A DNA stretch of 63,148 bases, filler included, from Salisapilia sapeloensis CBS 127946 (lineage: Eukaryota > Protista > Oomycota), in the NCBI GenBank assembly GCA_023334545.1. It is 10 parts of 10 records of this genome, joined end to end, with 100 filler letters (N's around TTAATTAATTAA, not from the genome) between each part and the next. Parts side by side here need not be neighbours in the genome. Positions count along the whole stretch, not along the records: positions 1 to 20,078 come from JAADVB010000303.1; 9 more parts are not named here. One strand, 5' to 3'. The first letter of the stretch is position 1. Each line of letters opens with the position of its first letter. Shown here one piece after another: positions 1 through 16,888 of the stretch. The notes under the pieces are model-generated. The model ran no database searches, was not told where the DNA came from, and saw only the letters and a program-made list of their open reading frames with translations. A program made the translations under genes and the position numbers.

Positions 1-1671
1 AGTTCGATCATTAACTATGCAGCCATTCAGATGAAGACAAGCGCTAACAACATGCTTGCTTTACACTTCCGGCGCCGGCTTCGGCAGTATATCCACTTTC
101 GGTATGCTACGAATGATGTGATAAAATTGAACAGAAAGGAAGAAACACGCCTTGTTGAAAGCTGCTATCCGATTCAAAAGGTTCCAATTCTAGACAATGA
201 TGGTCAACCTACCCAAGACACCAGGCCACTTTGGACCGAGTGGGATCATACAAACAATTCCTTAAAGCTAGAACTGCGTCATTGACTTGCTATGGTGCCA
301 TGGCCACTTACGATTTGACGCAACACAGGACATTTTATCCGTAAGTTACATGATATGCTAAGATGGATGGAGATGTTTGTGGCCAAACACCCGCGTACGA
401 AGGGATCAAAACTCTACTCTTTATTACCAGTCTCTACGTCGTATCAGCCACTCTTCATTACCATCTCTTCTCACAGTTTATACAACATCTTTGCCCAGCT
501 CAAACAAAGCAATAGCTTCAAGAAGTACCTGCGCAGTAAGCTAGATATTGAGTTGGATCGGCGTCTTAAATCAGATTCGCAGCTACCTTTTAGTAAAACA
601 ACTTTTGCTGTGCACGGTAAAAACTCCTAAGGAAAGTCTTCAATGTGGCACCCTTCGAAACTAAGCATCGGACATTTGGTAACCAAATGACTACGAACGG
701 ATATTCGGTGTCAATTTCGATGCATTGTCTACAAGAAGCGACTACTGACGTCACGCTAGATGCCCAAACAAGAAACTTAGACAGCACGATGGAAAGACAG
801 TGTCCATGCATCAAAACAAAACCACCTGAATTACTTTAGAGACGCACTCTCTAAGCTCGGTCCCGAATATGAACCAGCTGTGCTTATCGGGATAGACCCG
901 GGGATGCGGACACTTGTAACCGCCGCAACGGTGGGTCACCTGCACCGAAGGCGTCGGAAAAAACCTCCCTATACAGATGTTGAGACCGATACGTCGGAGG
1001 ATATTCAAAAGCAAGGCTTCAAGAAATTTATATCGGTTGACGCGCAAGAATGTCGCCATCTAGCTAAGTTCGGTGACTATGCACAATGGCATGAAGACTT
1101 AAAGTCTCGTGAGCCGTGGTATCGCTCAATCCTTAGCGCCGTACCTTCACACAAGGTATCCAGCTACGAAGACTACGTCATCCGCCTCCCATTCTTTTGG
1201 AAGCACCTTAGCTTCATGTTGACATTCACAGCAGTAGAAGGCTTTCGGAGGTGGCGATTCACGCGCAGGAGAGCGAGCATGAAGGCTCTTGAAACCATTG
1301 CAATCCCATCGATGAATACCGAACGAGGAAGACGTATTCGTCTTGTCACCAGCGTCTCCATCAAGCTCGCCTTTTTACAAAAATAACAGGCGAATGAGGA
1401 CATCAGAACCAAAACACGTCGATCAAAAAAGAAGCTGAAGGAGATTGGTGAGATGCACAAATTTAAAAAAGCACGCCTGGCGGATAAAACGATTAGGCTA
1501 ACATGTACCGGAAACGTTCTACACTGTGCGAACAGTAAATGCACGGCAAACTTCTGGAACCGAGACGTCAACTCGGCTCTGAGCATCCTTGAGCAACTTA
1601 GATATGGTTTAAAGGAAAAGCATGGGGCCATTAAAATTCGAGTTATGCGGCGTGGACTACCAAAGATGTAG
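1..1671 (+). pseudogene. Fragmented Fanzor1 (eukaryotic TnpB-like RNA-guided RuvC nuclease); 5' part extends beyond the window start
   Basis: The + ORFs 31-285, 355-630, 645-839, 880-1386 and 1453-1671 stitch into one protein. RuvC-I GIDPG (Asp codon 895-897). RuvC-II IDEYRTRKT..C in a shifted frame (Glu codon 1314-1316, absent from the ORF track). Zn-ribbon C-x4-C then RuvC-III WNRDVNSA (Asp codon 1564-1566). Premature stops at 283, 316, 628 and 1384, plus several frameshifts. Confidence 0.85.
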
Positions 1672-1680
1672 AAAGGATTC

Positions 1681-1736
1681 ATGTAGGCGGAAAGCTATGC
1701 AGCACATGTGCTGCGGAAACGCGTAGCCGTCTACAT
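1681..1736 (+). ncRNA. Candidate Fanzor omegaRNA scaffold / transposon right end (nested stem-loop)
   Basis: Begins 10 nt after the Fanzor stop. ATGTAGGCG (1681-1689) pairs with CGTCTACAT (1728-1736). GCTATGC (1694-1700) pairs with GCGTAGC (1721-1727). Perfect 16-bp palindrome GCAGCACATGTGCTGC (1699-1714). GCG-GAAA-CGC tetraloop hairpin (1713-1722). Transcription is not shown. Confidence 0.45.
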
Positions 1737-2954
1737 CCATATATTGCTGAGCACATACGGAAGACTAGTACGGATGCCAGTGACCTTTCGTTCTCGCATA
1801 GAATAGCCGGTAAGAACAATAGAAAATGAGAGCTCAACCCATTGCTTACTCGGACCATTTCATCGCTCTAGCATCATGAACGGTGTTCAAGCTCACGCTT
1901 TATCGTTTATAATAGCAAGTCCAAGATTTGTCATGTACAATTTGAAGTCTGGGATGGTCTAGGAAGGTAGCTTTGGAGTTTGCATAGCAGTAAGTCGCAG
2001 CAAATGATGTCTAGACAGTTTAGTTCATGTAGTTGCAACAATCTCTCTGCTGATATCGTCATAATGTCATGGAAACTGTCAGACTGACCACTTCTGCTGT
2101 CATGAATCGTCTCGCTCCATGCTCAGACTCGTAGTACATTGAGAGCTTTTGACTATTAGGACATGATGGAGCTGCACAGTCTGCTTACCAGTATACACCA
2201 GAAGCTTAATTCCCCTTCTCAGCATGTGCCAACATAAACATGCATATTCATGAGAGCCCTTCCTACCCTACGATGCTAAGCGAAAGGCTAAGATAGACAT
2301 TAAGACTATGTTCGCGCTGAATACAGATTCAGCAATATTGGGGATTCACATTTTGTATTTCGATTTATCACTTGTCATTAAGAGCCTAACGTGACAATTC
2401 AATACAAAATTTCCGACTAACGAGGAATGCAAGAAGAAGTGATCGTTCGCCTTCGATGCGATCAGGAGGAAACCATCTTCGAGAATACTTCAAGTCGCGT
2501 CTGGTGCTCGACATATGCACATTTGAAAAAGCGCGCGAACGACTTGGTAAGCTCTTCGCTTTACTTGCGCTAGTGAGTTCTTCGCCATGTCATTGGGACG
2601 AAGTACAGCATGGATCGCAAATATCGCTCAATCATTTCATCCAACACGGTACTATATCTGTTCCGAAAGATAAGCGAAGAGCTCACTAGCGCAATTAAAT
2701 CGAATGACAGTTCAACCTGAAGGGCTTCGAGGATACACCACGATATACCCAACACTATGCCCCGCCAAGGTTTGGCTGAGGAGCGGACAATATACATGGA
2801 TAGAAAGGTAAATGTGGATAGCGATGTAAGAGTAGGACGAACTAATCAAAGAGTTTGACATCGGTTCCTGCTACAGTTTTAGCGTTTTTGTTCACATAAT
2901 GCGTAACGCTCCTTGCTTAATGCCCGAATTTCTGTTCAGCGAATACGGTCTTAA

Positions 2955-3229
2955 CAAATGCAAGGATCAGTCTACACGCAAGCTAAGAGTAAGCGGTATA
3001 CATCTTTGTGTCCAAAATGAAGGCAGACGAAAAGGAACGAAGGTATCAGATCTGCGAAGGAGACCTTGATGGGCCGTTGATTCATGAAGGAAACTTGATC
3101 GGTGTATCCTCATGGACTTTTGCCTATTGCAAAAAAAGAATAAGAATGATTTTCACCAAGGTCAGTGCTGTTTGTGATCTTATTAATGAAGCAGCAAAAC
3201 TTGGTCTGGACAGCCGCAGCGAGAACTGA
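2955..3229 (+). pseudogene. Decayed trypsin-like (S1) serine protease C-terminal fragment
   Basis: CEGDLDGPL..EGNLIGVSSW...C......FTKVS resembles C.GDSGGPL....LIGVVSWG..C.....YTRVS. The catalytic Ser position is Leu. An upstream C..LC segment lies in another frame. Confidence 0.55.
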
Positions 3230-4721
3230 ACTTCTTAATCGAAAATGACTTTAATTTAAGATTGCTGTTCATGCTATAACCTCAGTAGAGCGTTATGTTT
3301 GTGTTCTTTTGAAGGTTTCGTAAGTTCTATCTCACCCATTGACAGACGAGGAACGTATCGAGCATTGTCTAGTGTTCCTCATTCTCCTTTGTGGTGCTCA
3401 GAGAAATTCCTTTGTTTTTCTCGCGCATACTGTGCAAAGTGCTTGCTCGGACATAGGTAGATGACTAAACACATAAATTCAATTCAATGTGTAAATTGCT
3501 TGCTGATCCTACTAGTGATAGCGAGCGCTAGGCGAGTAGCATCCAATGAACATGATAGTATCCGACAGATTTATACGGAGAATTAACTAGAAGAGCTGAA
3601 CAACATCATAATGCGTACTCAGTCAAAGCAAATTGAACCAATTTGCGCTTGGAGATGTATGCTATGAAACCGACAGCTGGTAAACACGAGCAGTCAATAT
3701 TGGTCTTAGCAAGAAAGTAGGCAATCACATGCTGAGATTAGAATTTAAATGAGAAATGGATTGGTACATCAAGTGTAGCAAAACATTACTAGATTCGACA
3801 TTCTGCTATACCTGGTCTATGACTAGTAGATGCTGGATGCGTTTCAGATGCCATTGTTTGCAAGGCCTGATCCTCAACGGCGTTCACACCTTTTGCTCTG
3901 GCATTCAGACAGACACGATACCACACTGCTCTCACACTCATCGATTTTTCGCGGCTATCTACGTTTTCTTCCTATATCACGATATGGACACGGCAATCTA
4001 CAATAACACATGCTAGTCTGCTATCTCAACACTAAAAATCTCCCTCCATCTACATTTATATAACTAGCTACCACCAGGAACGCAAAGCAAAGCATTGTGA
4101 ATCGGTCAAGAAAGCATGGAAAAAGGTTTTATTCCATGTGGTCAAGTTATTCGACTAACTCGATGAAATTGATTGAAAAGTGGTAAATGCACAAAGCTGC
4201 TGGGTGCACCGGGACTTGAAAGCTCTCGCTAGTATATAAACCTGCGATGAAAATGTTCGTGCATACCTTATGTAAGTCTTTTCTAGTCGCTCATGACCTC
4301 GCCGACTTCCAGTCATACTTGGACGTTCAATAGATACAGACACCCGGCCATATCATTACACAAGATCCGCCGGTCCTTCAGACATCGCTACCATCTTTAA
4401 AATGCAATTGACTTTTCTTCGTTGACAAAAGGACGTATGACCAAGTCTATAAAACCCTAGATACTTTAAATTCCCTCAAGCAGAGTTCAGAAACCGAGAC
4501 TCGATATTCCACAACTTCATGTTTATCATCGTATCCATTCTACGCATATGACACCGTCTCACAGTAGAATCTAATCTCTACCTTTTACAGTCGTAAATTC
4601 TACCGTTTAGTCTAAAACCATGACAAAAGTCCACGTGGACCATATCTGAGGCGTCAAAGGAGCTGTAGGGAGAGGTCCAAGGGATCGCACGCTGAGCGCA
4701 CGAGATTCATCGTTCGAGAGC

Positions 4722-7283
4722 ATGTACAACCAGAATCAAAACTACGGTCAGAACCCAAACTACGGCCAGGCCGGCGGTCAAGACCAATACGCTCAGCAGC
4801 AGTATGCGCAGCAGCAGCAATACGCGCAGCAGCCTGGATACCAGGATTATCAGCAGCAAGGGTATGCTCAACAGGGGTACCAGCAAGATTATAGCCAGCA
4901 GCAAGACTACAGCCAGCAGCAGTACAACCAGTACGACCAGTACAATGGCCAGGGGTACGAGCCGGAGCCATCGATGCCAGGTCAGCAGCCTGGCGAGTGG
5001 GACTTTGCCGGCATGGAGGCCAAGGACGGCATCCGCTTTTCGTGGAACAGTTGGCCTAGCACCAAGCTGGAGCAGACGCGCAGTGTCGTGCCACTTGGGT
5101 GCCTGTACCAGCCTCTGAAGCCGATCGAAGGCATGCCTCCTGCGCTCGAGTACGATCCGATTCAGTGCAAGTCGTGCGCTTCGGTCTTGAATCCGTTCTG
5201 CCAAGTGGACTTTGTCAGTAAGCTCTGGGTCTGTCCGTTCTGCGTCACGCGCAACCAGTTCCCGCCGCACTATGCCGAGAATATTACGCAGGAGAACCTC
5301 CCAGCGGAGCTCATTCCGCAGTACTCGACGCTCGAGTACGAGCTGCAGGATCGTCAGGCCGGCCCACCTGTGTTCGTCTTTTGTATCGACACCTGTGTGC
5401 ATGAAGAGGAGCTGGAGCAGCTCAAGGACTCGATCCAGCAGACGCTCAACCAGCTCCCGCCCGACGCGCTCGTGGGGCTCGTCACCTTCGGCACGATGGT
5501 CCACGTGCATGAGCTAGGCTTCACGGACGTCCCCAAGTCCCACGTCTTCCGCGGGAACAAGGACTTTACGGCGCAGCAGATCCACGACATGCTCGGCCTG
5601 GCAGTCGTGAACCGAGGACCGCAGCAGCAGCAGCAGCAGCATACGAATAACGCCAGTCGCTTCCTCTTGCCGGTGCTTGACTGCGGCTTCCACGTCGAGT
5701 CCATTCTCGAGGACTTGCAACGAGACCCGTGGCCCGTGGCAGCCGACCAGCGCGCGCAGAGATGCACTGGTGTCGCTCTGAGCGTCTGCGTCGGTCTGCT
5801 CGAATCGACGTATCGTGGCCAAGGCGCTCGGATCATGGCGTTTGTCGGCGGCCCACCGACCGTCGGGCCTGGCAGCATCGTCAACCGCGACCGGAAGGAG
5901 GACATCCGGTCGCACACAGACCTCCAGAAGGACCGCGCGCCTCTGACCAAGACGGCCGTGGAGCACTATGCGCACTTGGCGGATCGATGCGTCAAGTCAC
6001 ATCACGTCCTCGACATCTTTGCCTGCTCTTTAGACCAGAGTGGCGTGATGGAGATGAAGCCTTGCGTCCAGCGCACGGGAGGCGTCGTCGTCCTTGCGGA
6101 TTCGTTCGGCCAGTCTGTCTTCCGCGAGTCCTTCAGTCGTATGTTCGCCAAGTTTTCGGACGAAGCCGCCGAGTGCGATCGAGACCACTTGACGATGGCG
6201 TTCGCAGGGAGTCTCGAAGTGCTCACGAGTCGAGAGTTCAAGGTCGCAGGTGCCATCGGTCCCTGTGCTGCCTCCCACCGCCAAGGCGCAGCGCCCAAGA
6301 ACGTGGCCGAGACACAGATCGGCGTCGGCGGCACGAACACATGGTCTATGGGTGGCCTCGACCCGAACACGACGCTTGCGCTCTACTTTGACGTGTCGAA
6401 CCAAGGCTCACTGGCGCCTGGCAAAGGCCGCTACCTGCAGCTCATCACGCGCTATCAGCATGCCAGCGGACGCTATCGCACGCGCGTGACGACCATCTGC
6501 GGTCCGTGGACGACGGATCCGAACGATACGCACTCGCTCGCTCGCAGCTTTGACCAGGAAGCCGCGGCCGTGCTCTTGGCACGCATCGCCGTGCACCGGT
6601 CGGAGCAAGGGGAGGAGCAGCTGGACATCATGCGCTGGATCGACCGGTCGCTCATCCGCCTCGCGTCGAGGTTTGCCGACTACCGAGCCGACGACCCGTC
6701 GAGCTTCCGCCTTCCGCCCGAGTTTTCCATTTTCCCTCAGTTCATGTTCCACCTCCGTCGATCGCAGTTCCTGACGGTCTTTGGGTACTCTCCGGATGAA
6801 AGCGCTTACTATCGCCATTCGTTACTACGAGAGAACGCGACGAACTCGTTGGTCATGATCCAACCGTCGCTTTTATCCTACTCCTTCAATGGCCCGCCAG
6901 AGCCTGCGCTCTTGGACTCGACGAGCGTCCGACCAGATACGATCTTACTACTGGATTCCTTCTTCTACGTCGTCGTCTTCCACGGCGACACGATCGCTGC
7001 GTGGCGAGACCAAAAGTACCATGAGGATCCGGCACATGAGCACTTCAAGAACCTGCTGGAAGCTCCGCAGGCAGATGCGCAGTTGATCATGGACTCGCGG
7101 TTCCCAGTCCCGAGATACATTGTGTGCGACCAGCACAAGAGTCAATCTCGGTTCCTAATGGCCAAGCTGAATCCGTCGACGACGCACAACAGCATGGACG
7201 GCCAGGGTGAAGTCATCTTCACGGACGACGTGTCGCTCAAGGTCTTCATGGAGCACCTGATCAACCTCGCGGTCAAGTCGTAG
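4722..7283 (+). CDS. SEC23: COPII coat protein Sec23 with Q/Y/G/N-rich N-terminal extension
   Basis: 853-aa ORF containing [11 protein letters not shown], Zn finger C..C..LNPFC..WVCPFC, trunk [52 protein letters not shown] and [15 protein letters not shown]. Confidence 0.97.
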
Positions 7284-7299
7284 GAATACTCGTTCTTTC

Positions 7300-7374
7300 T
7301 CTTTTCTTTGGGTGATGTGTTCTTTTCTTTGGGTGACGTGCTCTTTTCTTTGGATGACACTTTCTTTTCTTTGG
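7300..7374. repeat. 21-bp tandem repeat (about 3.6 copies) downstream of Sec23
   Basis: Units TCTTTTCTTTGGGTGATGTGT / TCTTTTCTTTGGGTGACGTGC / TCTTTTCTTTGGATGACACTT / TCTTTTCTTTGG. Confidence 0.85.
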
Positions 7375-7534
7375 CCAAGTACCGTCCGTTACTAAAAGAG
7401 GGTGGAAGAGGCTATTTATACGCCAGCATACTCTAGCCAAGTGGATTTTTCCACCTTGGGTTCTATGCCACAGTCCAGTTTCCCAGTGAGAAGGCGGCGA
7501 CTAGTAGCTCGAGGCGTCTGCTGAGAGAAACTTC

Positions 7535-10500
7535 ATGACGGACAAGGAGCCGTATTTACGCGCTGAGAGCATGTCGACGGACGATGCGCATGTCGAGGCA
7601 GAGATCGTGCGTCCGAGTGCCTCCATACGCGTTACGCAGAGCCGACCGACGTTTAGTGACGCCGGCTCCGGCCGAGGGCTCGGGACGAACGACCATGGGC
7701 CTAACCAGCCGCCGATGAACGTCGGGTCGAGCGACGCAGGCGATCTGGACGATAACATCATCTCTGTCCACGGGTACATGCACAAGCAGGGCAAGCGGAC
7801 GATCAAAGGTCCGATCCACAAGAGCTGGAAGCGTCGGTACTTTGCGTTGGAGAAAGCCAAGATCTACTACTTCCACAGCCACTTGGACTGTCGACAGTAC
7901 TTCACCACTCGCAACGCAGATCTGGTGGTGGGCGCCGTGGAGCTTAAGGACGCGCTGCAGCTGCGTCCTTGTGCCCGACTCGACCTGCCGCATAAGGGCT
8001 TTGAGATCCACACGAAGCGCCGGGTGTGGGTCCTGTGTCCCGAGACGGATGACGAGTACCGCATGTGGTTCCAAGGCGTCGAACGCGCCATCGTCGGGAA
8101 CGGTGCTGGGAACATCATCGAGCGCAAGCTGCCCAACGTCCGCAAGTACCAGATGAAGGGCAACCAGACGTACCGTGTCTTTTACTTTATCTTCCTCCTG
8201 ACGGGTCTCATGGAGCTCCTGGGCCTGGCCTTCTGGTTTGTCGTGGGCGTCGAGCCATGCGACGCCGCTCGACCGACGATCGACTGCGGGAAGATCATGA
8301 GCAACACGCTCAACGTCCTCCGCTGTCGTCCGGAACCCATGAGCGGGGTCCTCACGCCTGCCGACTGGTACATGCAGATCGCCGGCGTGGACGACGTCAA
8401 GTGTTTCCACGACCCGCCGATCCTCCAGTGGATCTCGTTCTTTGCTCTGGGCTTTGCAGAGGTCCTGAGCTTCTTCCTCGGGACCTTGTACTACTTGGGC
8501 ATGTGGAAGCCAGTGCGTCGAGGAGCGCACTACTTTGACGAGTTCGAGCCTCGTGTCCCGGATGAGCTCTGGCCTCGTGTCGATGTGCTACTGTGCCACT
8601 ACTCAGAGCCGGCGGAGGAGACGATCGATACGCTCATGGCGTGTGTGAACCTGCAGTACCCTCCGCATCTGCTCCAGATCTACGTCCTGGACGACGGCTA
8701 CTGCAAGAGCAAGTGGACCAAGGGGAACCCGGTGCCGACGGTGGAACTCAACAAGGGCATTCTCGAGACGGCAGGAGACTTGCGTCAGGAAGTCGCGCAG
8801 TTCATGTACGATCGGGTGTGCGACCCGAATGAAGAGATGGAGGTGTATGCGTGGCGGAAGCTGCATTCGTCTGCGAACCTCCCGTCGGCTTCTCGTGTCA
8901 AGGTGGTGAATCGAGCGGACTGTGCTGCTGGATCCTTCCGAGACGACTATCGGTACCCTGGTCTACCCCATGTGACGTACATTGGTCGCGTCAAGCCAGA
9001 GGTGCACTACTCCAAGGCAGGCAACATCAACAATTGTCTCTACAACGAAGGTGCGAATGGCAAGTACCTCATGATCCTCGATACGGACATGCAGCCGCAC
9101 CCCAAGTTCATCTTAGCCACTCTTCCCTTCTTCTTTGACGACGAAGACAGACAGGACAAGAGCACGTACGCTTGCTGCTGCACTGGCTGTAGCAACGTCG
9201 CCAAGCTCTGCTGCGCCTCGTGCAAGATCGCAGGCGTGCCGGAGGAGAGCATGAGCTACTGCTCGAAAGAGTGCTTTGAGAACGCCATGCACGCGCGGAG
9301 CGACGTCCATCGACGACAGGTGAACGGGACGCTCAACGACAATACGGAGACCAAGGAGCTCCGGTGCATGAAGTGCGACACCAAGCTCGGGAAGCAGGGC
9401 TTCTGCCGCAAGTGCCAGAACACGGAGGGAGACGGGCAGACGGCGACGCTGTCGACGTACTCGGACGACGTGCAGCACAACTCGGTCGCCTTCGTCCAGA
9501 CGCCACAGTACTTTCGAGACTGCGTCCAGCTGCAGATCGGAGACCCGATGGGCCATCGTAACGCGACATTCTACGACGCCATCCAGACTGGACAAGATGG
9601 ATACGAGTGCGCTTCGTTCGCCGGCACGAACGCCATGTTCCGCCGAGAAGCGCTGGACTCGATCGCGGGCATTCAGTACGGCAGTCTGACGGAGGACTGC
9701 TACACCGGCCAGATGCTGTGCGGCATGGGCTGGAAGGCGCTGTACTTCCGGAAGGACTTTGAAGGCGAGGCGACGGAGCGCATTCGGCTTGCAGAAGGAC
9801 TCATCCCCGAGACGGTGGCCAACAGTCTGGCGCAGCGGAAGCGGTGGGCCAAGGGCAACTTCCAGATCGCTCTGATGAAGAAGGACAAGAAGCTCGTGGA
9901 TCCCGAGTGGAGGCAGCCGCACGTCGAGCTCCCGCCAGCGCGCAAGAGCAACAAGTTTATGCGCCGAGTCTTCTACCTGAACTCGACCTTGTACCCGCTC
10001 GGATCCATCTCGGCGCTCCTCTTTTGCTACATTACCATCTACTTTTTGTACACCGGCTACGCACCCATCTACATGAGTGGCCTGCGGCTATTGATCGCTC
10101 TCGTGCCCAAGCTCTTGGTCCAAGGACTCTTGTCTGCGCTGAGCAACCGGACGGTCGAGAACAACGACGTCATCCGGTCGCAGGAAGTCTGGTTCGCCTA
10201 TGCGTTCACCAACTGCACGGCCGTCGCGGAGGCCTTTTGGTGGAAGATCACGGGCAAGGAGCCGCGGTGGTTCAACACCGGAGGCGCGAACCGAGGATCG
10301 CTCGCGGAAGTCCCGAACGTCATTGTCTTTATGGGCACGTGCGTCGGCATCGCCTGGGCGATTGTGCGCTTCTTGGCAGGGTACAATGTGGAGCAAACGT
10401 CGCATGGCGCGTCGTTGCTGTTCGCAAGTCTGCTGATGGGCCTGTTCATCGCCGTCAAGCTCGGCCCGAGCGTCCGCATGAGCATCCAGGAGTACTTTGG

Positions 10501-10621
10501 CTGGAGCTACCAGAGCATGATGGACCAGGGCAACTTTTTCGGGAGCGTCTCGATGGCCGTGGGCTTCGCCTTCATCGTCCTGTGGGTGTACATCGAAAAG
10601 CCCTCGAGCAATCCGTTTTAA
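7535..10621 (+). CDS. CesA: Cellulose synthase with N-terminal PH domain (oomycete CesA1/CesA2 type), copy A
   Basis: 1028 aa, intronless. PH domain (GYMHKQG..WKRRYF..W), GT2 motifs LDDG, KAGNINN, DTD, QTPQYF, TED, QRKRW, and multiple TM helices. Confidence 0.96.
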   Translation: MTDKEPYLRAESMSTDDAHVEAEIVRPSASIRVTQSRPTFSDAGSGRGLGTNDHGPNQPPMNVGSSDAGDLDDNIISVHGYMHKQGKRTIKGPIHKSWKRRYFALEKAKIYYFHSHLDCRQYFTTRNADLVVGAVELKDALQLRPCARLDLPHKGFEIHTKRRVWVLCPETDDEYRMWFQGVERAIVGNGAGNIIERKLPNVRKYQMKGNQTYRVFYFIFLLTGLMELLGLAFWFVVGVEPCDAARPTIDCGKIMSNTLNVLRCRPEPMSGVLTPADWYMQIAGVDDVKCFHDPPILQWISFFALGFAEVLSFFLGTLYYLGMWKPVRRGAHYFDEFEPRVPDELWPRVDVLLCHYSEPAEETIDTLMACVNLQYPPHLLQIYVLDDGYCKSKWTKGNPVPTVELNKGILETAGDLRQEVAQFMYDRVCDPNEEMEVYAWRKLHSSANLPSASRVKVVNRADCAAGSFRDDYRYPGLPHVTYIGRVKPEVHYSKAGNINNCLYNEGANGKYLMILDTDMQPHPKFILATLPFFFDDEDRQDKSTYACCCTGCSNVAKLCCASCKIAGVPEESMSYCSKECFENAMHARSDVHRRQVNGTLNDNTETKELRCMKCDTKLGKQGFCRKCQNTEGDGQTATLSTYSDDVQHNSVAFVQTPQYFRDCVQLQIGDPMGHRNATFYDAIQTGQDGYECASFAGTNAMFRREALDSIAGIQYGSLTEDCYTGQMLCGMGWKALYFRKDFEGEATERIRLAEGLIPETVANSLAQRKRWAKGNFQIALMKKDKKLVDPEWRQPHVELPPARKSNKFMRRVFYLNSTLYPLGSISALLFCYITIYFLYTGYAPIYMSGLRLLIALVPKLLVQGLLSALSNRTVENNDVIRSQEVWFAYAFTNCTAVAEAFWWKITGKEPRWFNTGGANRGSLAEVPNVIVFMGTCVGIAWAIVRFLAGYNVEQTSHGASLLFASLLMGLFIAVKLGPSVRMSIQEYFGWSYQSMMDQGNFFGSVSMAVGFAFIVLWVYIEKPSSNPF

Positions 10622-10920
10622 TCTTTCTTTTTCTTTTCTTTCGCAATACACATCCTCTCTTTTCTTTTTCTTTTTCGTAGAAGTGGTGCTGCCACGAGCA
10701 TGTCCTGCGTCTTCTCCCCTCTTTCCAAGCACCTTGACAATCGTTTCACATGCCGCTGTGCCTATAACGGGCGTCGTCTCCACTCTCCAAAGTGCCTCGA
10801 GGTGCCTCGTAGGTGAGAATCCAGTTCCGACCGGTCTTTGACTTGGCGTTTGTATGTAGACGGTAGAGACCGGCCGAAAAGAGGTGGTTTCGTCATTTCT
10901 CTAACTTGGACCAAGTACAG

Positions 10921-13900
10921 ATGGACCGCTCGTCCTCTCTCCAGGACGACGCCGACTACGAGCGATACGACACGCCGTCGGCGGCCGACGTACAGGTCTC
11001 GCGCCCTGGTGTCGCCCCCACAGCCACGCAGCCGCATGGATTCGCCGAGCCGCCAGCGCCCTTCGAGCCGGCCATGGACGTGACGCCCACGCCAGACGCA
11101 GACGTCCACGCCGACAACGTCATCTCTGTCCACGGGTACATGCACAAGCAGGGCAAGCGGACGATCAAGGGTCCGATCCACAAGAGCTGGAAACGCCGCT
11201 ACTTTGCGTTGGAGAAGACCAAAATCTTCTACTTCCACAGCCACCTCGAGTGTCGACAGTACTTTACGACGCGGAATCCGGATCTAGTGGTGGGTGCGAT
11301 TGAGCTCAAGGACGCGCTGCAGCTACGCCCGTGTGCTCGGTTGGATCTGCCGCATAAGGGCTTTGAGGTGCTGACGAAGCGCCGGGTGTGGGTCCTGTGT
11401 CCCGAGACGGACGACGAGTACAATCTGTGGTTTGACGGCGTCGAGAGTGCCATCGTCGCAGCAGGGTCGGGGAATATCGTCGAGCGCAAGTTGCCCAACG
11501 TCCGCAAGTACTATATGAAAGGCATTGCGACGTACCGTCTTCTCTACGTGCTCTTCGTCATCGTCGGTCTGCTCGAGCTCTTCGGCCTCTTGTTCTGGTT
11601 CAGCGTTGGCGTCGAGCCGTGCGATCCGTCCAACCGACTCTACGAGTGTGAGCGCGTGTACGCGAACTCTCCGAACGCGCTCAACTGTCGAGAGGAGCCA
11701 ATGGGCGGTGTCTTCCAGCCGCCGGAGTGGTACATGGAGCTCGCAGGCGTCGATGACGTTGCTTGTTTCCACGATCCGCCTGTGGCGCAGTGGATTTCGT
11801 ACATCGCCATGATCGTCGCAGAGCTCGTGGCGTGGGTCATGGGAAGTCTCTACTACTTGGGCATGTGGAAGCCAGTGCGTCGAGGAGCGCACTACTTTGA
11901 CGAGTTCGAGCCTCGTGTCCCGGATGAGCTCTGGCCGATGGTCGACGTCCTCTTGTGCCACTACTCGGAGCCGGCGGAGGAGACGATCGATACGCTCATG
12001 GCGTGCATGAACCTCCACTACCCTCCCCACCTGCTGCACATCTACATCCTAGACGACGGCTACTGCACTGCGACGTGGACCAAGGGCAGTCCGACGCCGG
12101 ATATTGAGCTGAATAAAGAGGTACTGGAGAAGTCGGGGGACTTAAGGCAGGAGCTGGCGCAGTTCATGTACGACCGAGTGTGCGACCCGAATGAAGAGAT
12201 GGAGGTGTATGCGTGGCGGAAGCTGCATTCGTCTGCGAACCTCCCGTCTCCGTCGCGTCCAAAGGTCGTGAATCGATCGGACTGTGCCGTCGGATCCTTC
12301 CGAGACGACTATCGATACACAGACCTTCCGCACGTGACGTACATTGGTCGCGTGAAGCCTCAAGTGCACTACTCGAAAGCAGGGAACATCAACAATTGTC
12401 TCTACAACGAAGGCGCCAGCGGTCGATACATGCTGGTGCTGGATTCAGACATGCAGCCGCACCCCAAGTTCATCCTAGCGACGCTTCCCTTCTTCTTTGA
12501 CGATGAAGATAGGAAGCTCAAGCACAAGTACACTTGCTGCGGCACGGGGTGCAACAATGTCGCGCGCATGTGCTGCGCCTCGTGTAAGATCGCAGGCGTG
12601 CCCGAGGAACGCATCAGCTACTGCTCGAAAGAGTGCTTTGAGAACGCCATGCACGTGGCGAGTGACATTCATCGTCGACAGGTGAACGGCACTGTGAGCG
12701 ACACGACGACCAAGAAGAAGGAGCTCCGGTGCTCTTCGTGCGGCGCCAAAGTGAACAAGAAGGGCGTCTGTCGCAAGTGCCACTCGACGACCGACGGAGG
12801 AGACGTCTCGGTCCTGCACACCTACTCGGACGACGTGCGAGACAACGCCGTGGCGTTCGTCCAGACACCGCAGTACTTTCGAGACTGCGTCCAGCTGCAG
12901 ATCGGAGACCCGCTCGGACATCGCAACGGAACGTTCTACGACGCCATCCAGACCGGGCAGGATGGGTACGACTGCGCGTCCTTTGCCGGCACGAACGCCC
13001 TCGTGCGCCGAGAAGCGCTGGACTCGATCGGAGGCATTCAGTACGGCGTCTTGACGGAAGACTGCTTCACTGGCCAGCGACTGGTCCAGCAGGGGTGGAA
13101 GGCCTTGTTCTTCCGGAAGGACTTTGAAGGAGACGTGTCGGAGCGCATTCGGCTGGCGGAAGGCATCATCCCGGACTCGGTGGCGGCGTCCTTGGCGCAG
13201 CGGAAGCGATGGGCCAAGGGCAACTTCCAGACATTCTTAATGCGAAAGAACAAGGTCGGGAGCCCCGACCCCGAGTGGAGGCAGCCCGAGGTCGCGACGC
13301 CCAAGTACCGCAAGCCCAACCGCCTCATGCGCCGCATCTTCTACATGAACTCGACCTTGTATCCGCTCTCGTCGCTCTCGGTCCTCCTCTTCTACTACAT
13401 CACCATCTGCTTCCTCTACACAGGCTACGCGCCCATCTACCTCAACGGCCTGCGGTTGCTTATCGCCATGATCCCGCGCATCCTCGTCCAAGGCATGCTG
13501 GCGGCGCTGGCCAACCGGACGGTCGACAGCAACGACGTCGCGCGGTCGCAGGAAGCGTGGTTCATCTACGCCTTCACCAACTGCACCGCCATGTTCGGCG
13601 CCATCGTGTGGAAGCTGACGGGCAAGAAGTCGCGCTGGCTGAACAAGCGAGACGCCACGCGCGGATCCATGGCCGAGCTCCCGAACATCCTCGTTTTCTT
13701 CGGCGCCGTCTTTGGCATCATTTGGGCTGTCGTGAGGTACATGGTCGGCTATTACAATCGCATTGAGAGCCATGGTGACTCGATGCTGACGGCGAGTGTC
13801 CTCATGGGCTTTTTCATCGTGTTCAAGCTCGGCCCGAGCGTCCGTATGAGCATCCAGGAGTACTTTGGCTGGAGCTACCAGAGTCTGATGGACCAGGGCA

Positions 13901-13986
13901 ACTTTATGGGCTCCACGTCCATCGCCTTTGGACTCATCTTCATCGTCCTGTGGGTGTACGTGGAGCGCCCGGCATCCTCCGCCTAG
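10921..13986 (+). CDS. CesA: Cellulose synthase with N-terminal PH domain (oomycete CesA1/CesA2 type), copy B
   Basis: Tandem paralog with the same PH domain and D,D,D,QxxRW set (LDDG, DSD, TED, QRKRW). First ATG is at 10921; the ORF track starts at an upstream TTG. INR-like TCATTTC at 10893. Confidence 0.96.
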   Translation: MDRSSSLQDDADYERYDTPSAADVQVSRPGVAPTATQPHGFAEPPAPFEPAMDVTPTPDADVHADNVISVHGYMHKQGKRTIKGPIHKSWKRRYFALEKTKIFYFHSHLECRQYFTTRNPDLVVGAIELKDALQLRPCARLDLPHKGFEVLTKRRVWVLCPETDDEYNLWFDGVESAIVAAGSGNIVERKLPNVRKYYMKGIATYRLLYVLFVIVGLLELFGLLFWFSVGVEPCDPSNRLYECERVYANSPNALNCREEPMGGVFQPPEWYMELAGVDDVACFHDPPVAQWISYIAMIVAELVAWVMGSLYYLGMWKPVRRGAHYFDEFEPRVPDELWPMVDVLLCHYSEPAEETIDTLMACMNLHYPPHLLHIYILDDGYCTATWTKGSPTPDIELNKEVLEKSGDLRQELAQFMYDRVCDPNEEMEVYAWRKLHSSANLPSPSRPKVVNRSDCAVGSFRDDYRYTDLPHVTYIGRVKPQVHYSKAGNINNCLYNEGASGRYMLVLDSDMQPHPKFILATLPFFFDDEDRKLKHKYTCCGTGCNNVARMCCASCKIAGVPEERISYCSKECFENAMHVASDIHRRQVNGTVSDTTTKKKELRCSSCGAKVNKKGVCRKCHSTTDGGDVSVLHTYSDDVRDNAVAFVQTPQYFRDCVQLQIGDPLGHRNGTFYDAIQTGQDGYDCASFAGTNALVRREALDSIGGIQYGVLTEDCFTGQRLVQQGWKALFFRKDFEGDVSERIRLAEGIIPDSVAASLAQRKRWAKGNFQTFLMRKNKVGSPDPEWRQPEVATPKYRKPNRLMRRIFYMNSTLYPLSSLSVLLFYYITICFLYTGYAPIYLNGLRLLIAMIPRILVQGMLAALANRTVDSNDVARSQEAWFIYAFTNCTAMFGAIVWKLTGKKSRWLNKRDATRGSMAELPNILVFFGAVFGIIWAVVRYMVGYYNRIESHGDSMLTASVLMGFFIVFKLGPSVRMSIQEYFGWSYQSLMDQGNFMGSTSIAFGLIFIVLWVYVERPASSA

Positions 13987-14162
13987 CTCTGGCGACGGAT
14001 AGTTTGGTATTCTCTTTCTGCTCTACTAGTTTTTAGATGGAGTAGAGGTTCCTTTTTCTTGCTTTTAACCTCCCTCGTACCACTTGCACCTTGTAAGACG
14101 CAACACGGGATGTATACTTTTCTACGACACATTCGTTGGTTGCTATTCCTTGTCGATTGAAT

Positions 14163-14634
14163 ATGGCCCAAGAGCTCTTTACGACGTATAAGCAGCTCAT
14201 TGACTCTTGTGTGTGTGTCCGAGGACAGGATGCGACGGCGGCGACGGGGATGCTGTATAGTATCGACCCGGTGAGCGGGAACGTTGCGCTGCTCGATGTG
14301 AGTGAAGAGGAGACGAGACTCACGGTGCTCCTGGGACACACGATCGTGAGCATCGAGAGCGCCGAAGAGGAGAGTGAACCGACATTGATGGAGCAGATGA
14401 CGGCCACTACGACCAACCTGGCGCAGGTACGACACTCTAGTAAATAGCACTACGCTTCGTCTAATAGGACTATGCGACGCATAGCATGACATTCCATTCA
14501 CCGTAAAAGAAGCGAATGGCGAGCTCTACCTCGACCTATACGACGGCGCTGCTCAGCTGCGTCCGCCATTCACCTCCGACGCACTCGAATGCAATGAAGA
14601 AGAGATGACATGCCGGATACGAGAGCTCTTGTAA
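14163..14634 (+). CDS. GEMIN6: Gemin6-like Sm-fold protein (2 exons: 14163-14426, 14485-14634)
   Basis: Exon 1 SIDPVSGNVALL...LGHTIVSIE resembles Gemin6 TTDPVSANIVL...MGHAVQTVE. A 58-bp GT-AG intron restores the frame to HDIPF...LRPPFTSDALECNEEEMTCRIRELL*, like the Gemin6 C-terminal domain. Confidence 0.7.
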
Positions 14635-14736
14635 CTCCAAGAGGAACACGAAGGCATTTACATGAACGAAAGCTATCTTGACTTGTCTGAACTACTACGA
14701 AATGAATGAGAACGAAATATAAAGCTGTGGTACGAC

Positions 14737-15711
14737 CTACGCTTGCACCGGACCATGCTGGTTCTTTTCCATCTCCTTCACCATGTACGGGTTGACGCCA
14801 GTATTTTGGTTCAAATCCGCGAACGTGTGGTTCACGTCGCGGTGGTTGGCTTCATCGGCACGAATGCACTTGATCATGTCCACGATCTTGGCGTCGTCCG
14901 GCAGCTTATAGTACGTTCGAGCAATCTTGGGCGCCACCTCATCGTTCCATTCGGGCAAGTTTCCGTCGTGAATGTCCTGCAAAAGACCAGTGTACGTGTG
15001 CACGGCCTCTTCCTCCAAGTACCCGACGAAGCGATGGCACGTTTTCGGGGATACGAGGTATGTGAGGAAGAAGGCATTGAAGAAGATGCCTTGTGCCGCG
15101 AGCACATTGAGCCGGAAAAGATAGCCTGGCTGACGCATGTTCATAAAGATGAGCAAGTGCATGCGCTCGTTCTCGGCTTCCTCGAGCAACGTGTGGATCC
15201 AGCCATAGTCACGGCGGAAAGCTCGCAGCGATCGAAGGTGGCGCAGCATCCCGCCCACCATTCCAGGCACACCAGCGATCGTTTCGAGGAAGAGGCATCG
15301 GCGTAGCCAGTCTTCTTTCTTCATCTCGCCACCAGGACCCTTGTACCTGGTGAAGAAGTCGAAACCTGAACGAGCCGTCCAAGTGGCAGCACGAGCGATG
15401 CGCTCATGCATCTTCTTCGGCTTACGGTGGGACTCGTCGATCTTTTCAATCTTGTCCAAGTCGTACACGGGGTGGTGCACCGGATTATCCCACACGATCT
15501 CATCGTCCCGCAGTCCGGCGATCGAGAGTGCGTGTCGGTTCGACGACTGTTTAAAATGCGTCGGCGTCGTGTCTTCGAGGCAGATGTCCTCTTGCTTGGG
15601 GTTGGTTGCATTGGAAAAGTAGTTCACCAGAGGCGGGGCGATGGTGTTTTGGTGGTGCAATGCGGATCGAGCGGCTACTGCCATGCGTTTTGATGCCATG
15701 GATGCGATCAT
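14737..15711 (-). CDS. AOX: Mitochondrial alternative oxidase
   Basis: LETIAGVPGMVGGM, EEAENERMHL, LEEEAVHTY and RADEANH di-iron motifs. R/S-rich N-terminal presequence. Confidence 0.97.
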   Translation of the reverse strand: MIASMASKRMAVAARSALHHQNTIAPPLVNYFSNATNPKQEDICLEDTTPTHFKQSSNRHALSIAGLRDDEIVWDNPVHHPVYDLDKIEKIDESHRKPKKMHERIARAATWTARSGFDFFTRYKGPGGEMKKEDWLRRCLFLETIAGVPGMVGGMLRHLRSLRAFRRDYGWIHTLLEEAENERMHLLIFMNMRQPGYLFRLNVLAAQGIFFNAFFLTYLVSPKTCHRFVGYLEEEAVHTYTGLLQDIHDGNLPEWNDEVAPKIARTYYKLPDDAKIVDMIKCIRADEANHRDVNHTFADLNQNTGVNPYMVKEMEKNQHGPVQA

Positions 15712-15749
15712 GGTTGTTTAGGAGTTGTTGTTGTTGTTGTTGTTCTTGT

Positions 15750-15764
15750 GAAATGGAAGAATGA
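15750..15764 (-). promoter_or_regulatory. Oomycete INR+FPR-like core promoter of AOX
   Basis: TCATTCTTCCATTTC on the minus strand, about 40 nt upstream of the ATG, followed by a (CAA)7 run in the 5' UTR. Confidence 0.6.
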
Positions 15765-15879
15765 ATTGCTGAGGCATTAAGTCGCTCAAGGTCAGACGAG
15801 AGGTGAGCTGTCTTACCATTGCGAAGCTTCGTATGACCTGTGAGTCTCAGCTCCTTATCATGAGACGTGGCAGAAATCT

Positions 15880-16685
15880 TCATCGAAGCAACGCCCCGTC
15901 ACATGCAAAGCGTCGTGGCGTAGTGTCGAGATGGAGTTTTAGCCAATTAAATGTTCGATCTTCGTGCAGTGAAAAAATTCTCGTGGCGTACGAAGAGGTC
16001 AGGCGGTATGTCTGACTGGATGCCTTATTGTTGAAAAGTAATGTCGGGTCAGGCAGAGAGGTCAGGCAAGGTGGACGGTACGACGGTGCTAGATCGTCAT
16101 ATTTGCGTCCACCGAGATTGCAACGGGTGTCCCTGTCTGACGGGGCGAATACTACCGCAGATAGAAGACTAGGAGCGGGTTTAGATAGGTAGAAGCGGGC
16201 AATGCGAGTAAATTTAGTCGAAATTGTCTCATTAAGAGCAGTGAAATGGAAGAAGATAGCGACCTTGCGCTCTATCTGAATATCGATGGAGGTAATGGGC
16301 GTTGTGTAGATGCAGTTGCAACCATCTTTCTCTTCGAGGTATAGAGAGCTGGTGGTAGATGGATAGAATCCAAGAAACATATCTATCATTGCAAATGCGT
16401 CGAGCACAAGTCTTTGGTGATAGGATAAGATGGATGGCTATGTAAATTTTCAATGCAGCTCTTGCATGTATAGATAGGATGCTGTAAAAAGGAAAAATTC
16501 CGACGGATGATCAAGTATATTCGACAGGAAGCAAACTCATTATCACGAAGTAAGTCGAAGAATCGATAGCTACTTGCATCTGAGACAGCTCGGAGGTCTT
16601 CGCATACAGTCCAAATCTTCCGTGAGTACTCTTGTGGTGATCTACATGATTTTCTTACCGTTTCAACACCACCTCCGGCATCTCT
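15880..16685 (-). CDS. Possible spliced hypothetical protein, divergent from HELLS
   Basis: Overlapping ORFs 16386-16751 and 15880-16407, a GTAAG donor and a pyrimidine-rich TTTTTACAG acceptor. No recognisable motif; the exon model is unresolved. Confidence 0.3.
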
Positions 16686-16888
16686 GCGCTCGATGATGGA
16701 TGGGAGTCGCATGCAGCGCAGTCTCCATGGTCGATCAGACGCCATCAACATGCATTCCGAAGGAGTGCATGTATCTTTTTCTATTGGCTATAAAAGATGA
16801 ATTTCCACCAATCCTAGACAACTATGAACCTCGAAAGCGCGGGAAATTCCGATCACCAGTCGCGACCGGCAGCTCCTCTTCCTTCGTC

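What the first reader, a model, noticed from the sequence alone, without database searches (positions are those of the whole stretch)
1660..1765. Candidate omegaRNA scaffold and element right end directly after the Fanzor stop
Seen: within 56 nt there is a 9-bp outer stem, a GAAA bulge, a 7-bp inner stem with a G-U pair, a perfect 16-bp palindrome and an alternative GCG-GAAA-CGC GNRA hairpin. The mismatches in the stems are G-U type, as expected for selection at RNA level. GATGTAG (1665-1671, overlapping the stop codon) can also pair with CTACATC (1731-1737), allowing an alternative fold. Established: Fanzor/TnpB guide RNAs derive from the element's right end downstream of the ORF, with the spacer coming from flanking DNA. 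Inference: the element ends near ...CCGTCTACATCC (1738), and ATATATTGCTGAGCACATAC... would be the spacer. The structure looks better preserved than the ORF, which could mean the RNA is still used in trans.
Basis: partly seen in the sequence, partly recalled or inferred. Interest (0 to 1): 0.75.

Follow-up and report, generated by a model that had tools for sequence, protein, structure and literature searches.

The report
Fanzor transposon right-end hairpin module
The hairpin after the stop codon of this dead Fanzor gene is real and is the conserved core of a 147-base non-coding end module, carried by about 33 transposon copies in this oomycete genome, that most likely encodes the nuclease's guide-RNA scaffold; the element ends at 1821, not 1738, and this kind of system is already known.

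Summary
The 56-nt hairpin (1681-1736) folds better than shuffles (z about -4.4 alone; -2.4 for 1660-1765).

Alignment of about 28 genomic copies shows similarity running from 1675, 3 nt after the stop, to 1821 (...AACAATA), not 1738.

This 147-nt module (about 167 nt in most copies) is the right end of a transposon family. Four copies carry a decayed Fanzor1 ORF. At least 25 copies are about 875-bp ORF-less elements that share only this module.

Within the genome there is no covariation above shuffles. However, a metagenomic contig with a near-intact Fanzor1 (43-57% amino-acid identity) has the same two-tier hairpin right after its stop, with compensatory changes. Only 0.8% of simulated neutrally drifted copies fold as well. 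The sense strand is the more stable one in 27 of 27 copies.

The module therefore fits the published Fanzor omegaRNA architecture, and I rate that reading about 0.55. It cannot be separated in silico from a cis-acting transposition signal.

The GNRA hairpin and the stop-codon pairing occur only in the window copy. No intact Fanzor was found in the assembly, so use in trans is unsupported.

Verdict: a new member of a known kind, of modest interest.

The parts
1..1671 (+). Decayed Fanzor1 (TnpB-like) ORF, missing its 5' part, which continues on contig C443. It has in-frame stops at 283-285, 313-315, 628-630 and 1384-1386 and a frame change between about 630 and 880. RuvC-I GIDPG has its D at 895-897. 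RuvC-III NRDVN has its D at 1564-1566. The stop codon TAG is at 1669-1671.
   Evidence: Translation. phmmer gave 86 relatives, the best being Phytophthora and Nothophytophthora proteins of 573-755 aa. Relatives carry PF07282. A profile of relatives hits SpuFz1 8gkh at 4e-31, plus GtFz1 and PpFz1. C443:1-120 reverse complement is 100% identical to window 1-120.
1675..1821 (+). Conserved non-coding 3' module, the right end of the transposon family. It is 147 nt here and about 167 nt in most copies; the window and L005 lack about 20 nt near the end.
   Evidence: 33 matches in the genome. There are sharp common boundaries at 1675 and at the terminal ...ACAATA. Upstream of 1675 there is no homology with the ORF-less elements.
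1681..1736 (+). Two-tier hairpin. The outer stem is 1681-1689 with 1728-1736, and the apical palindromic stem lies within 1698-1715.
   Evidence: z -4.4. About 90% of cells are paired across 27 copies. The outer and apical stems are kept in L058 with compensatory changes. Drift simulation gives p about 0.008. The + strand is more stable in 27 of 27 copies.
1749..1785 (+). Second helix: GAGCAC at 1749-1754 with 1780-1785. It is intact in most copies but has two mismatches in the window copy.
   Evidence: RNAalifold columns 89-93 with 121-125, about 90% paired. By my own reading, a similar helix is possible in L058; this was not formally tested.
1815..1821 (+). Terminal heptamer AACAATA (GACAATA in other copies), the right terminus of the element.
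   Evidence: Similarity among all copies is lost immediately after this heptamer.
1822..1842 (+). Unique flank. This is the position from which a guide would be read if the module is an omegaRNA gene.
   Evidence: Flanks differ in every copy. The guide position is taken from the literature. This is inference only.

Best explanation
Window 1675-1821 is the conserved non-coding right-end module of a Fanzor1-carrying DNA transposon of an oomycete. Its core is a selected two-tier hairpin (1681-1736), followed by a second helix and a tail ending in ACAATA.

The module most likely encodes the scaffold of the Fanzor guide RNA (omegaRNA/fRNA). It would be transcribed in the same sense as the ORF. The hairpin would serve as the protein-binding stem-loop, and the guide would be read from the unique flank beyond 1821.

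ORF-less elements of about 875 bp carry the same module. They would then hitch-hike on a Fanzor supplied in trans.

Shown: the boundaries, the copy family, the structure, cross-lineage retention of the hairpin, and the strand bias.
Inferred: that the module is transcribed, bound by Fanzor, and supplies a guide.

The window copy itself is a dead relic. Its ORF is broken, its helix 2 has two mismatches, and its end carries a 20-nt deletion.
For: Position and extent:
- The module starts 3 nt after the Fanzor stop and runs to a sharp terminus shared by about 28 aligned copies.
- Published Fanzor RNAs derive from the 3' non-coding region abutting the right end, up to about 200 nt past the ORF, with the guide just beyond. 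C. reinhardtii has 20 extra ORF-less copies of its fRNA.

Structure:
- The hairpin has z -3.5 to -4.4.

Cross-lineage retention:
- A covariance model built from the copies hits immediately after the stop of a Fanzor1 with 43-57% amino-acid identity in L058 (27 bits, E 2.5e-4; identity).
- L058 folds into the same architecture (-25.8 kcal/mol, z -3.35), with double changes that keep pairs.
- Only 0.8% of simulated neutrally mutated hairpins fold as well.
- The hairpin is 72% identical at nucleotide level. The coding 3' end (C983 against L058, about 340 nt) is 66% identical, with 82% only over the RDVN catalytic motif.

Strand bias:
- Wobble pairs all lie on the sense strand, and the + strand is more stable in 27 of 27 copies.

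Modularity:
- ORF-bearing and ORF-less elements share this module and nothing else upstream of it.
- A second Fanzor family in the genome has its own post-stop module of about 170 nt, which also occurs on ORF-less elements.

Lead only, not a test:
- Solved Fanzor1 complexes share a first stem-loop of 7 bp that binds RuvC/TNB. The apical stem here has 7 bp.
Against: - There is no transcript or RNP evidence.
- Within the genome there is no covariation above shuffles: 2 double changes against 2.0 expected. RNAalifold found no compensatory pairs.
- The cross-lineage support rests on a single outgroup sequence. The column-wise count on the MAFFT alignment is only modest: covariation score 0.149 against 0.133, reached by 5 of 500 shuffles.
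- The right end is only slightly better conserved than the body of the ORF-less elements, 0.92 against 0.88.
- By eye, the left end also carries small palindromes, so hairpins could be DNA-level transposition signals.
- No intact Fanzor was found in the assembly.
- No clear TAM-like motif was seen, only an A-rich left flank.
Confidence: 0.55

Rival explanations
1. The module is only a cis-acting transposon end. The hairpin would be a DNA or single-stranded-DNA signal recognised by the unidentified transposase that moves both the Fanzor-bearing and the ORF-less elements, as with the subterminal hairpins of IS200/IS605 or Helitron ends. It would have no guide-RNA role.
For: - The module is exactly what autonomous-looking and ORF-less elements share.
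- The elements have no TSD and only a 7-nt imperfect TIR, which fits non-cut-and-paste or ssDNA mechanisms.
- Conservation along the ORF-less element is nearly uniform.
- G-T wobbles are also tolerated in ssDNA, so the strand bias fits a top-strand hairpin equally well.
- Bao and Jurka describe hairpin-ended Helitron2 carriers of Fanzor1.
Against: - The hairpin lies 85-140 nt from the terminus, directly after the stop codon, rather than subterminally.
- It is retained next to a Fanzor1 with only 43-57% amino-acid identity. This ties it to the nuclease gene rather than to a particular carrier.
- The termini do not match Helitron (TC...CTRR) or other classified ends.
- The left ends of the Fanzor-bearing and ORF-less elements are far less alike than the right-end module.
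Confidence: 0.25
2. The hairpin is a chance or neutral palindrome fixed in the founder copy and merely inherited by all copies. On this reading it has no function.
For: - All copies in the genome are 78-91% alike, and there is no covariation above shuffles.
- The most diverged copies (L018, L022-L024) have lost the fold.
Against: - L058 retains the fold despite 14 substitutions and indels in 56 nt, with p about 0.008 under simulated drift.
- L058 has its own z of -3.35.
- Double changes keep pairs.
Confidence: 0.1
3. The module is a 3' UTR element of the Fanzor mRNA, acting in stability, 3'-end processing or translation control rather than as a guide scaffold.
For: It lies on the sense strand immediately after the stop.
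Against: - It is carried by at least 25 ORF-less elements that have no mRNA to regulate.
- It extends exactly to the transposon terminus.
Confidence: 0.05

Closest known systems
Fanzor1 omegaRNA / fRNA (Saito et al. 2023, PMC10432273; Jiang et al. 2023, PMC10530073; Xu et al. 2024, PMC11423790)
   Same: - It is a sense-strand, structured, conserved non-coding region between the nuclease stop and the transposon right end, about 150-200 nt long.
- Extra ORF-less copies exist in the genome, as for the C. reinhardtii fRNA.
- The first structure is a stem-loop with a 7-bp apical stem.
- The associated protein family hits SpuFz1, GtFz1 and PpFz1.
   Different: - There is no RNA or RNP evidence here.
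- There is no sequence similarity to any described omegaRNA, and no Rfam hit.
- The local nuclease genes are all broken.
- The TAM is unknown.
Bacterial non-autonomous IS200/IS605 derivatives that keep the element ends without the genes (from my own knowledge, not tested here)
   Same: Short ORF-less elements share the ends of a TnpB-family element and outnumber the gene-bearing copies.
   Different: This is a eukaryotic host. The body of the ORF-less element is unrelated to the Fanzor element. The transposase is unknown.
Unclassified Fanzor1 elements that share one end with other repeat families (MCi-2 and CMe-1A/TE-N2_CMe in Bao and Jurka 2013, PMC3627910)
   Same: - Families share one end and differ elsewhere.
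- They lack recognisable TIRs, and TSDs are unclear.
- Oomycetes (Phytophthora, Pythium, Albugo) are already listed as Fanzor1 hosts.
   Different: Here the shared part is a short post-ORF module of about 150-170 nt. MCi-2 shares a 6-kb 3' region and CMe-1A shares a 635-bp 5' part.

Membership tests
Fanzor/TnpB omegaRNA (OMEGA guide RNA) | Encoded on the nuclease's strand between the 3' end of the ORF and the transposon right end | tested here: met
   The module spans 1675-1821, starting 3 nt after the stop and ending at the common terminus of about 28 copies.
Fanzor/TnpB omegaRNA (OMEGA guide RNA) | Conserved secondary structure supported by covariation | tested here: inconclusive
   There is no covariation among genomic copies. 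One outgroup, L058, keeps the hairpin with compensatory changes, with drift simulation p about 0.008. The column-wise count is modest.
Fanzor/TnpB omegaRNA (OMEGA guide RNA) | Transcribed and bound by the nuclease, with a guide read from the flank beyond the right end and a TAM at the left flank | not testable with these tools
   No expression data are available. The left flank is only A-rich.
Fanzor/TnpB omegaRNA (OMEGA guide RNA) | A cognate intact nuclease in the same genome | tested here: not met
   Every long Fanzor match in the 22.4-Mb assembly carries stops. The assembly is fragmented, so a missed copy is possible.
Fanzor1 protein | Homology to solved Fanzor1 structures and the RuvC/TNB motifs | tested here: met
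   GIDPG and NRDVN are present. Relatives carry PF07282. The profile of relatives hits 8gkh at 4e-31 and 9cer at 3e-27. The window pieces alone give no Pfam or PDB hit.
Fanzor1 protein | Intact reading frame with the catalytic RuvC-II glutamate | tested here: not met
   There are four in-frame stops and a frame change. The DEYRTS region is degraded.
TIR DNA transposon / MITE | Terminal inverted repeats and target-site duplication | tested here: not met
   There is only GTTATTGT against the reverse complement of ACAATAC, about 7 nt and imperfect. No TSD of any length appears in 18 full copies.
Helitron | 5'-TC and CTRR-3' ends, with a hairpin about 10 nt from the 3' end | tested here: not met
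   The ends are GTTATTG... and ...GACAATA. The hairpin lies 85-140 nt from the end.

The most novel reading that the evidence does not exclude
The ORF-less elements would be eukaryotic guide-only hitch-hikers. They share a common body of about 700 bp that has been fitted with either of two exchangeable post-ORF modules, one matching each of two Fanzor1 lineages in this genome. On this reading the modules are swappable omegaRNA cassettes that let a non-coding element borrow whichever Fanzor is active. This would be cassette exchange of guide-RNA genes between eukaryotic transposons.
Probability: 0.2. Interest if true: 0.55.

Novelty: new member of a known kind. Interest (0 to 1): 0.35.

Why it matters
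- It supplies a well-bounded candidate omegaRNA module for an oomycete Fanzor1 lineage. It also corrects the element end to 1821, which anyone testing a guide would need.
- It shows that ORF-less elements carrying Fanzor-type 3' modules outnumber the nuclease genes in this genome by roughly ten to one.
- If the module-swap reading holds, it would be a tidy natural example of guide-RNA cassettes moving between transposon backbones in a eukaryote.
- Otherwise this is an ordinary, decayed Fanzor element.

Tried and rejected
- Pfam on the four ORF pieces of the window gave nothing, and phmmer of one piece against PDB gave nothing. Identity as Fanzor1 came only through relatives.
- Rfam at E up to 1 gave only a chance miRNA-like match on the other strand.
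- My first pair count used a wrong register for the inner stem. I redid it.
- I looked for remote homology between the ORF 3' end and the ORF-less body upstream of 1675. There is none: the scores did not exceed those of shuffled sequences (the local score was reached by 83% of shuffles, the anchored global score by 96%).
- I looked for an empty paralogous site through the repeat downstream of the window (1867-2357, about 74% identical to C739). None was found.
- I looked for long TIRs or left-right complementarity. None was found.
- The profile of 16 Fanzors was too diverse for the metagenome scan. A 6-sequence profile worked.
- An 875-type left-end fragment in C983 first looked like the Fanzor element's own left end. 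Three copies with different upstream flanks then placed the true left boundary about 190 nt further in.
- The Phytophthora and Nothophytophthora loci therefore could not be fetched for covariation.
Full report
**1. Observation**

- a 9-bp outer stem, 1681-1689 with 1728-1736;
- GAAA at 1690-1693;
- a 7-bp inner stem, 1694-1700 with 1721-1727, with one U-G pair;
- a perfect 16-nt palindrome at 1699-1714;
- GCG-GAAA-CGC at 1713-1722;
- GATGTAG (1665-1671) complementary to CTACATC (1731-1737).

As RNA, 1660-1765 folds at -30.3 kcal/mol with z -2.40, and 4 of 200 shuffles fold as well. The opposite strand gives z -1.73. The tighter stretch 1676-1741 gives -26.5 kcal/mol and z -3.46. The bare 56-nt hairpin gives z -4.4.

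**2. The gene upstream**

Frame 1 of window 1-1671 reads as a TnpB-like protein with GIDPG (RuvC-I) and NRDVN (RuvC-III). It is broken by in-frame stops at 283-285, 313-315, 628-630 and 1384-1386 and by a frame change between about 630 and 880.

The pieces alone hit nothing in Pfam or PDB. A full phmmer scan with the 168-aa piece found 86 relatives. The best are hypothetical proteins of Phytophthora cactorum, P. boehmeriae and Nothophytophthora, 573-755 aa long. Several relatives carry the Cas12f1-like TNB domain PF07282 above threshold. A profile of 16 relatives hits the solved Fanzor1 structures: SpuFz1 8gkh at 4e-31, GtFz1 9cer at 3e-27 and PpFz1 9cf0 at 2e-24. The gene is therefore a dead Fanzor1.

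The other genes in the window are Sec24, two tandem PH-domain cellulose synthases, an alternative oxidase and an SNF2 helicase, all long uninterrupted ORFs. Together with the best hits, this points to an oomycete. That is an inference from established knowledge that PH-domain cellulose synthases are typical of oomycetes. Oomycetes are already listed as Fanzor1 hosts.

**3. Where the element really ends**

Searching the window's own genome (22.4 Mb, 1365 contigs) with 1400-2000 gave 33 matches. Nearly all cover window 1675-1812 only.

Aligning the copies with their flanks shows three things.
- (a) Similarity starts sharply at 1675, 3 nt after the TAG.
- (b) In 25 copies it continues about 29 nt beyond the equivalent of 1812, to a common terminus ...GGAAATGACAATA, after which every flank is different.
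- (c) The window and one other copy (L005) share a variant with a deletion of about 20 nt that ends in the same heptamer. This places the window's terminus at 1821 (...GGTAAGAACAATA).

The proposed spacer ATATATTGCTGAGC... is among the well-conserved columns of the module. If there is a guide, it starts at 1822.

**4. What carries the module**

Only C983, C494 and C282 share the Fanzor ORF upstream of the module. These copies, like the window's, abut contig ends. C443:1-120 is the exact reverse complement of window 1-120, so it continues the window copy leftwards.

The other 25 or so copies belong to an ORF-less repeat of about 875 bp with sharp ends, GTTATTGTTGG... and ...GACAATA. About 30 left ends and 33 right ends are detectable in the assembly.

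The ORF-less family shares with the Fanzor element only the last roughly 167 nt. Upstream of 1675 there is no detectable homology. Column identity along the ORF-less element is nearly uniform, at 0.80-0.94. The right end is only slightly higher, 0.92 against 0.88, as expected for copies decaying neutrally after insertion.

There is no target-site duplication and only a 7-nt imperfect terminal inverted repeat. The left flank is A-rich. Helitron and TIR/MITE definitions are not met, and I could not classify the carrier. Unclassified Fanzor1 carriers without TIRs are on record.

**5. Is the structure selected?**

Within the genome:
Because it was derived from one of these sequences, that figure is not independent evidence.
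- Double changes are no more frequent than in shuffles: 2 against 2.0 expected.
- RNAalifold finds no compensatory pair.
- The GNRA hairpin and the stop-codon pairing are private to the window copy.
- The high-frequency variants in stems are mostly A/G opposite U, so pairing is kept only on the sense strand. Accordingly the + strand hairpin is more stable than the - strand in 27 of 27 copies, with means of -20.7 and -13.9 kcal/mol. The copies are related, so this reflects a few events, not 27.

Across lineages:
- A metagenome scan with a 6-protein profile returned contig L058, which carries a Fanzor1 interrupted by one frameshift. It is 43% identical to the window in the RuvC-I region and 57% identical in the C-terminal region.
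- A covariance model built from the 27 copies gave a single hit among 15 loci. It lies directly after the L058 stop, at 4273-4439, with 27 bits and E 2.5e-4.
- L058 folds into the same two-tier hairpin: an outer stem with one bulge, an internal loop, and a 9-bp apical stem closed by a UACG loop. Its MFE is -25.8 kcal/mol and its z is -3.35.
- Relative to the genomic family, the apical A-U pair becomes G-C. In the model alignment, two outer pairs change on both sides (G-U to C-G, and C-G to U-A).
- The conserved core is therefore the outer stem plus the apical palindromic stem, not the full 7-bp inner stem.
- I simulated neutral drift by applying the observed 14 substitutions and the indels at random positions to the family consensus or to the window hairpin. 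The mean was -15.5 ± 3.9 kcal/mol, and only 0.8% of 5000 simulated sequences folded as well as L058.
- The hairpin is 72% identical at nucleotide level. The coding 3' end (C983 against L058, about 340 nt) is 66% identical, rising to 82% only over the RDVN catalytic motif.
- On a structure-blind MAFFT alignment the column-wise count is modest: covariation score 0.149 against 0.133, reached by 5 of 500 shuffles.
- This is one outgroup only. I treat it as real but limited evidence for selection on the fold.

**6. Mechanism**

Published work places Fanzor guide RNAs in the 3' non-coding region abutting the right end, up to about 200 nt past the ORF, with the guide read from the flank. It also reports extra ORF-less copies of the RNA gene in C. 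reinhardtii. Solved Fanzor1 complexes share a first stem-loop of seven base pairs, followed by a variable region.

The module here fits this anatomy. It has a hairpin right after the stop with a 7-bp apical stem, a second helix (1749-1754 with 1780-1785, degraded in the window), and a tail running to the terminus. I therefore rate the omegaRNA-scaffold reading at about 0.55.

The main rival is that the hairpin is a cis-acting DNA or ssDNA transposition signal. These tools cannot exclude it, and it is not mutually exclusive with the omegaRNA reading.

All Fanzor matches in the assembly carry stops, although the assembly is fragmented.

**7. A second family and module exchange (partly followed up)**

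The profile search also found relics of a second, unrelated-in-DNA Fanzor1 lineage on C487 and C508. Their similarity also ends about 170 nt after the stop, at ...CAGGCCCTAA. That module has at least seven further copies. It contains a hairpin closed by UUCG in five of seven copies, one of which is lengthened but keeps the loop. RNAalifold support is weak.

The ORF-less carriers of this B-type module share several hundred bases of body with the 875-bp family that carries the A-type module. So one non-coding backbone occurs with either of two Fanzor-type 3' modules. This is the basis of the novel reading given in the report.

**8. Verdict**

The structured post-stop module is a good omegaRNA candidate. 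However, the right end, the spacer and the claim of better preservation within the genome are wrong, and the local system is dead. It is a new member of a known kind.

Noticed in passing
G000 contigs C845, C804, C545 and others (loci L005-L030); no full copy in the window: An ORF-less repeat family of about 875 bp, with about 30 copies at 78-91% identity and ends GTTATTGTTGG... and ...GACAATA. It has no TSD and no long TIR. It shares only its last roughly 167 nt with the Fanzor element.
   Followed up: yes
L038 (C487:17994-21575) and L042 (C508:25778-29161); copies L050-L057: Relics of a second Fanzor1 lineage. It has its own conserved post-stop module of about 170 nt ending ...CAGGCCCTAA, with at least 7 further copies. 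The module contains a UUCG-closed hairpin and a long palindrome.
   Followed up: partly
L050, L051, L053, L054 compared with L014:792-1667: ORF-less carriers of the B-type module share 180-450 nt of body with the 875-bp family that carries the A-type module. One backbone therefore occurs with two alternative Fanzor-type 3' modules. By eye, the 875-bp body also holds a short relic resembling the last codons of the B-type ORF.
   Followed up: partly
window 1-120 and G000:C443:1-120: The two contig starts are exact reverse complements over 120 nt. C443 therefore continues the window's Fanzor copy leftwards, and the assembly broke inside the repeat. C1189, C494 and C282 also end inside Fanzor copies.
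   Followed up: partly
L035 (C983) reverse strand, about 2046-2116: A fragment of the 875-type left end lies about 190 nt upstream of the left boundary of the C983 Fanzor copy. The true left boundary of the Fanzor element (...CTTGTTTGTTGTAGCG...) is defined by three copies with different upstream flanks.
   Followed up: partly
window 4722-18961: Sec24, two tandem PH-domain cellulose synthases (7535-10621 and 10906-13986), an alternative oxidase (14737-15711, - strand) and an SNF2 helicase. All are long uninterrupted ORFs, which indicates an oomycete host.
   Followed up: partly
window 1867-2357: The flank downstream of the element is itself about 74% similar to part of contig C739 (L025). This is either another repeat or a paralogous region. 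It gave no empty site.
   Followed up: partly
L058 (metagenome contig JACCDQ011571073.1) 1816-4268: A near-intact Fanzor1 read as two overlapping ORFs of 713 and 222 aa (1816-3957 and 3600-4268), so with one frameshift. It is followed by the same hairpin at about 4295-4348. It is the closest available outgroup.
   Followed up: yes
A1 columns 153-181; window 1812-1821 and L005: The 20-nt deletion variant of the right end is shared by a Fanzor-bearing copy (the window) and an ORF-less copy (L005). The long variant also occurs in both kinds. This suggests exchange of the module between the two kinds of element, or its repeated derivation.
   Followed up: no
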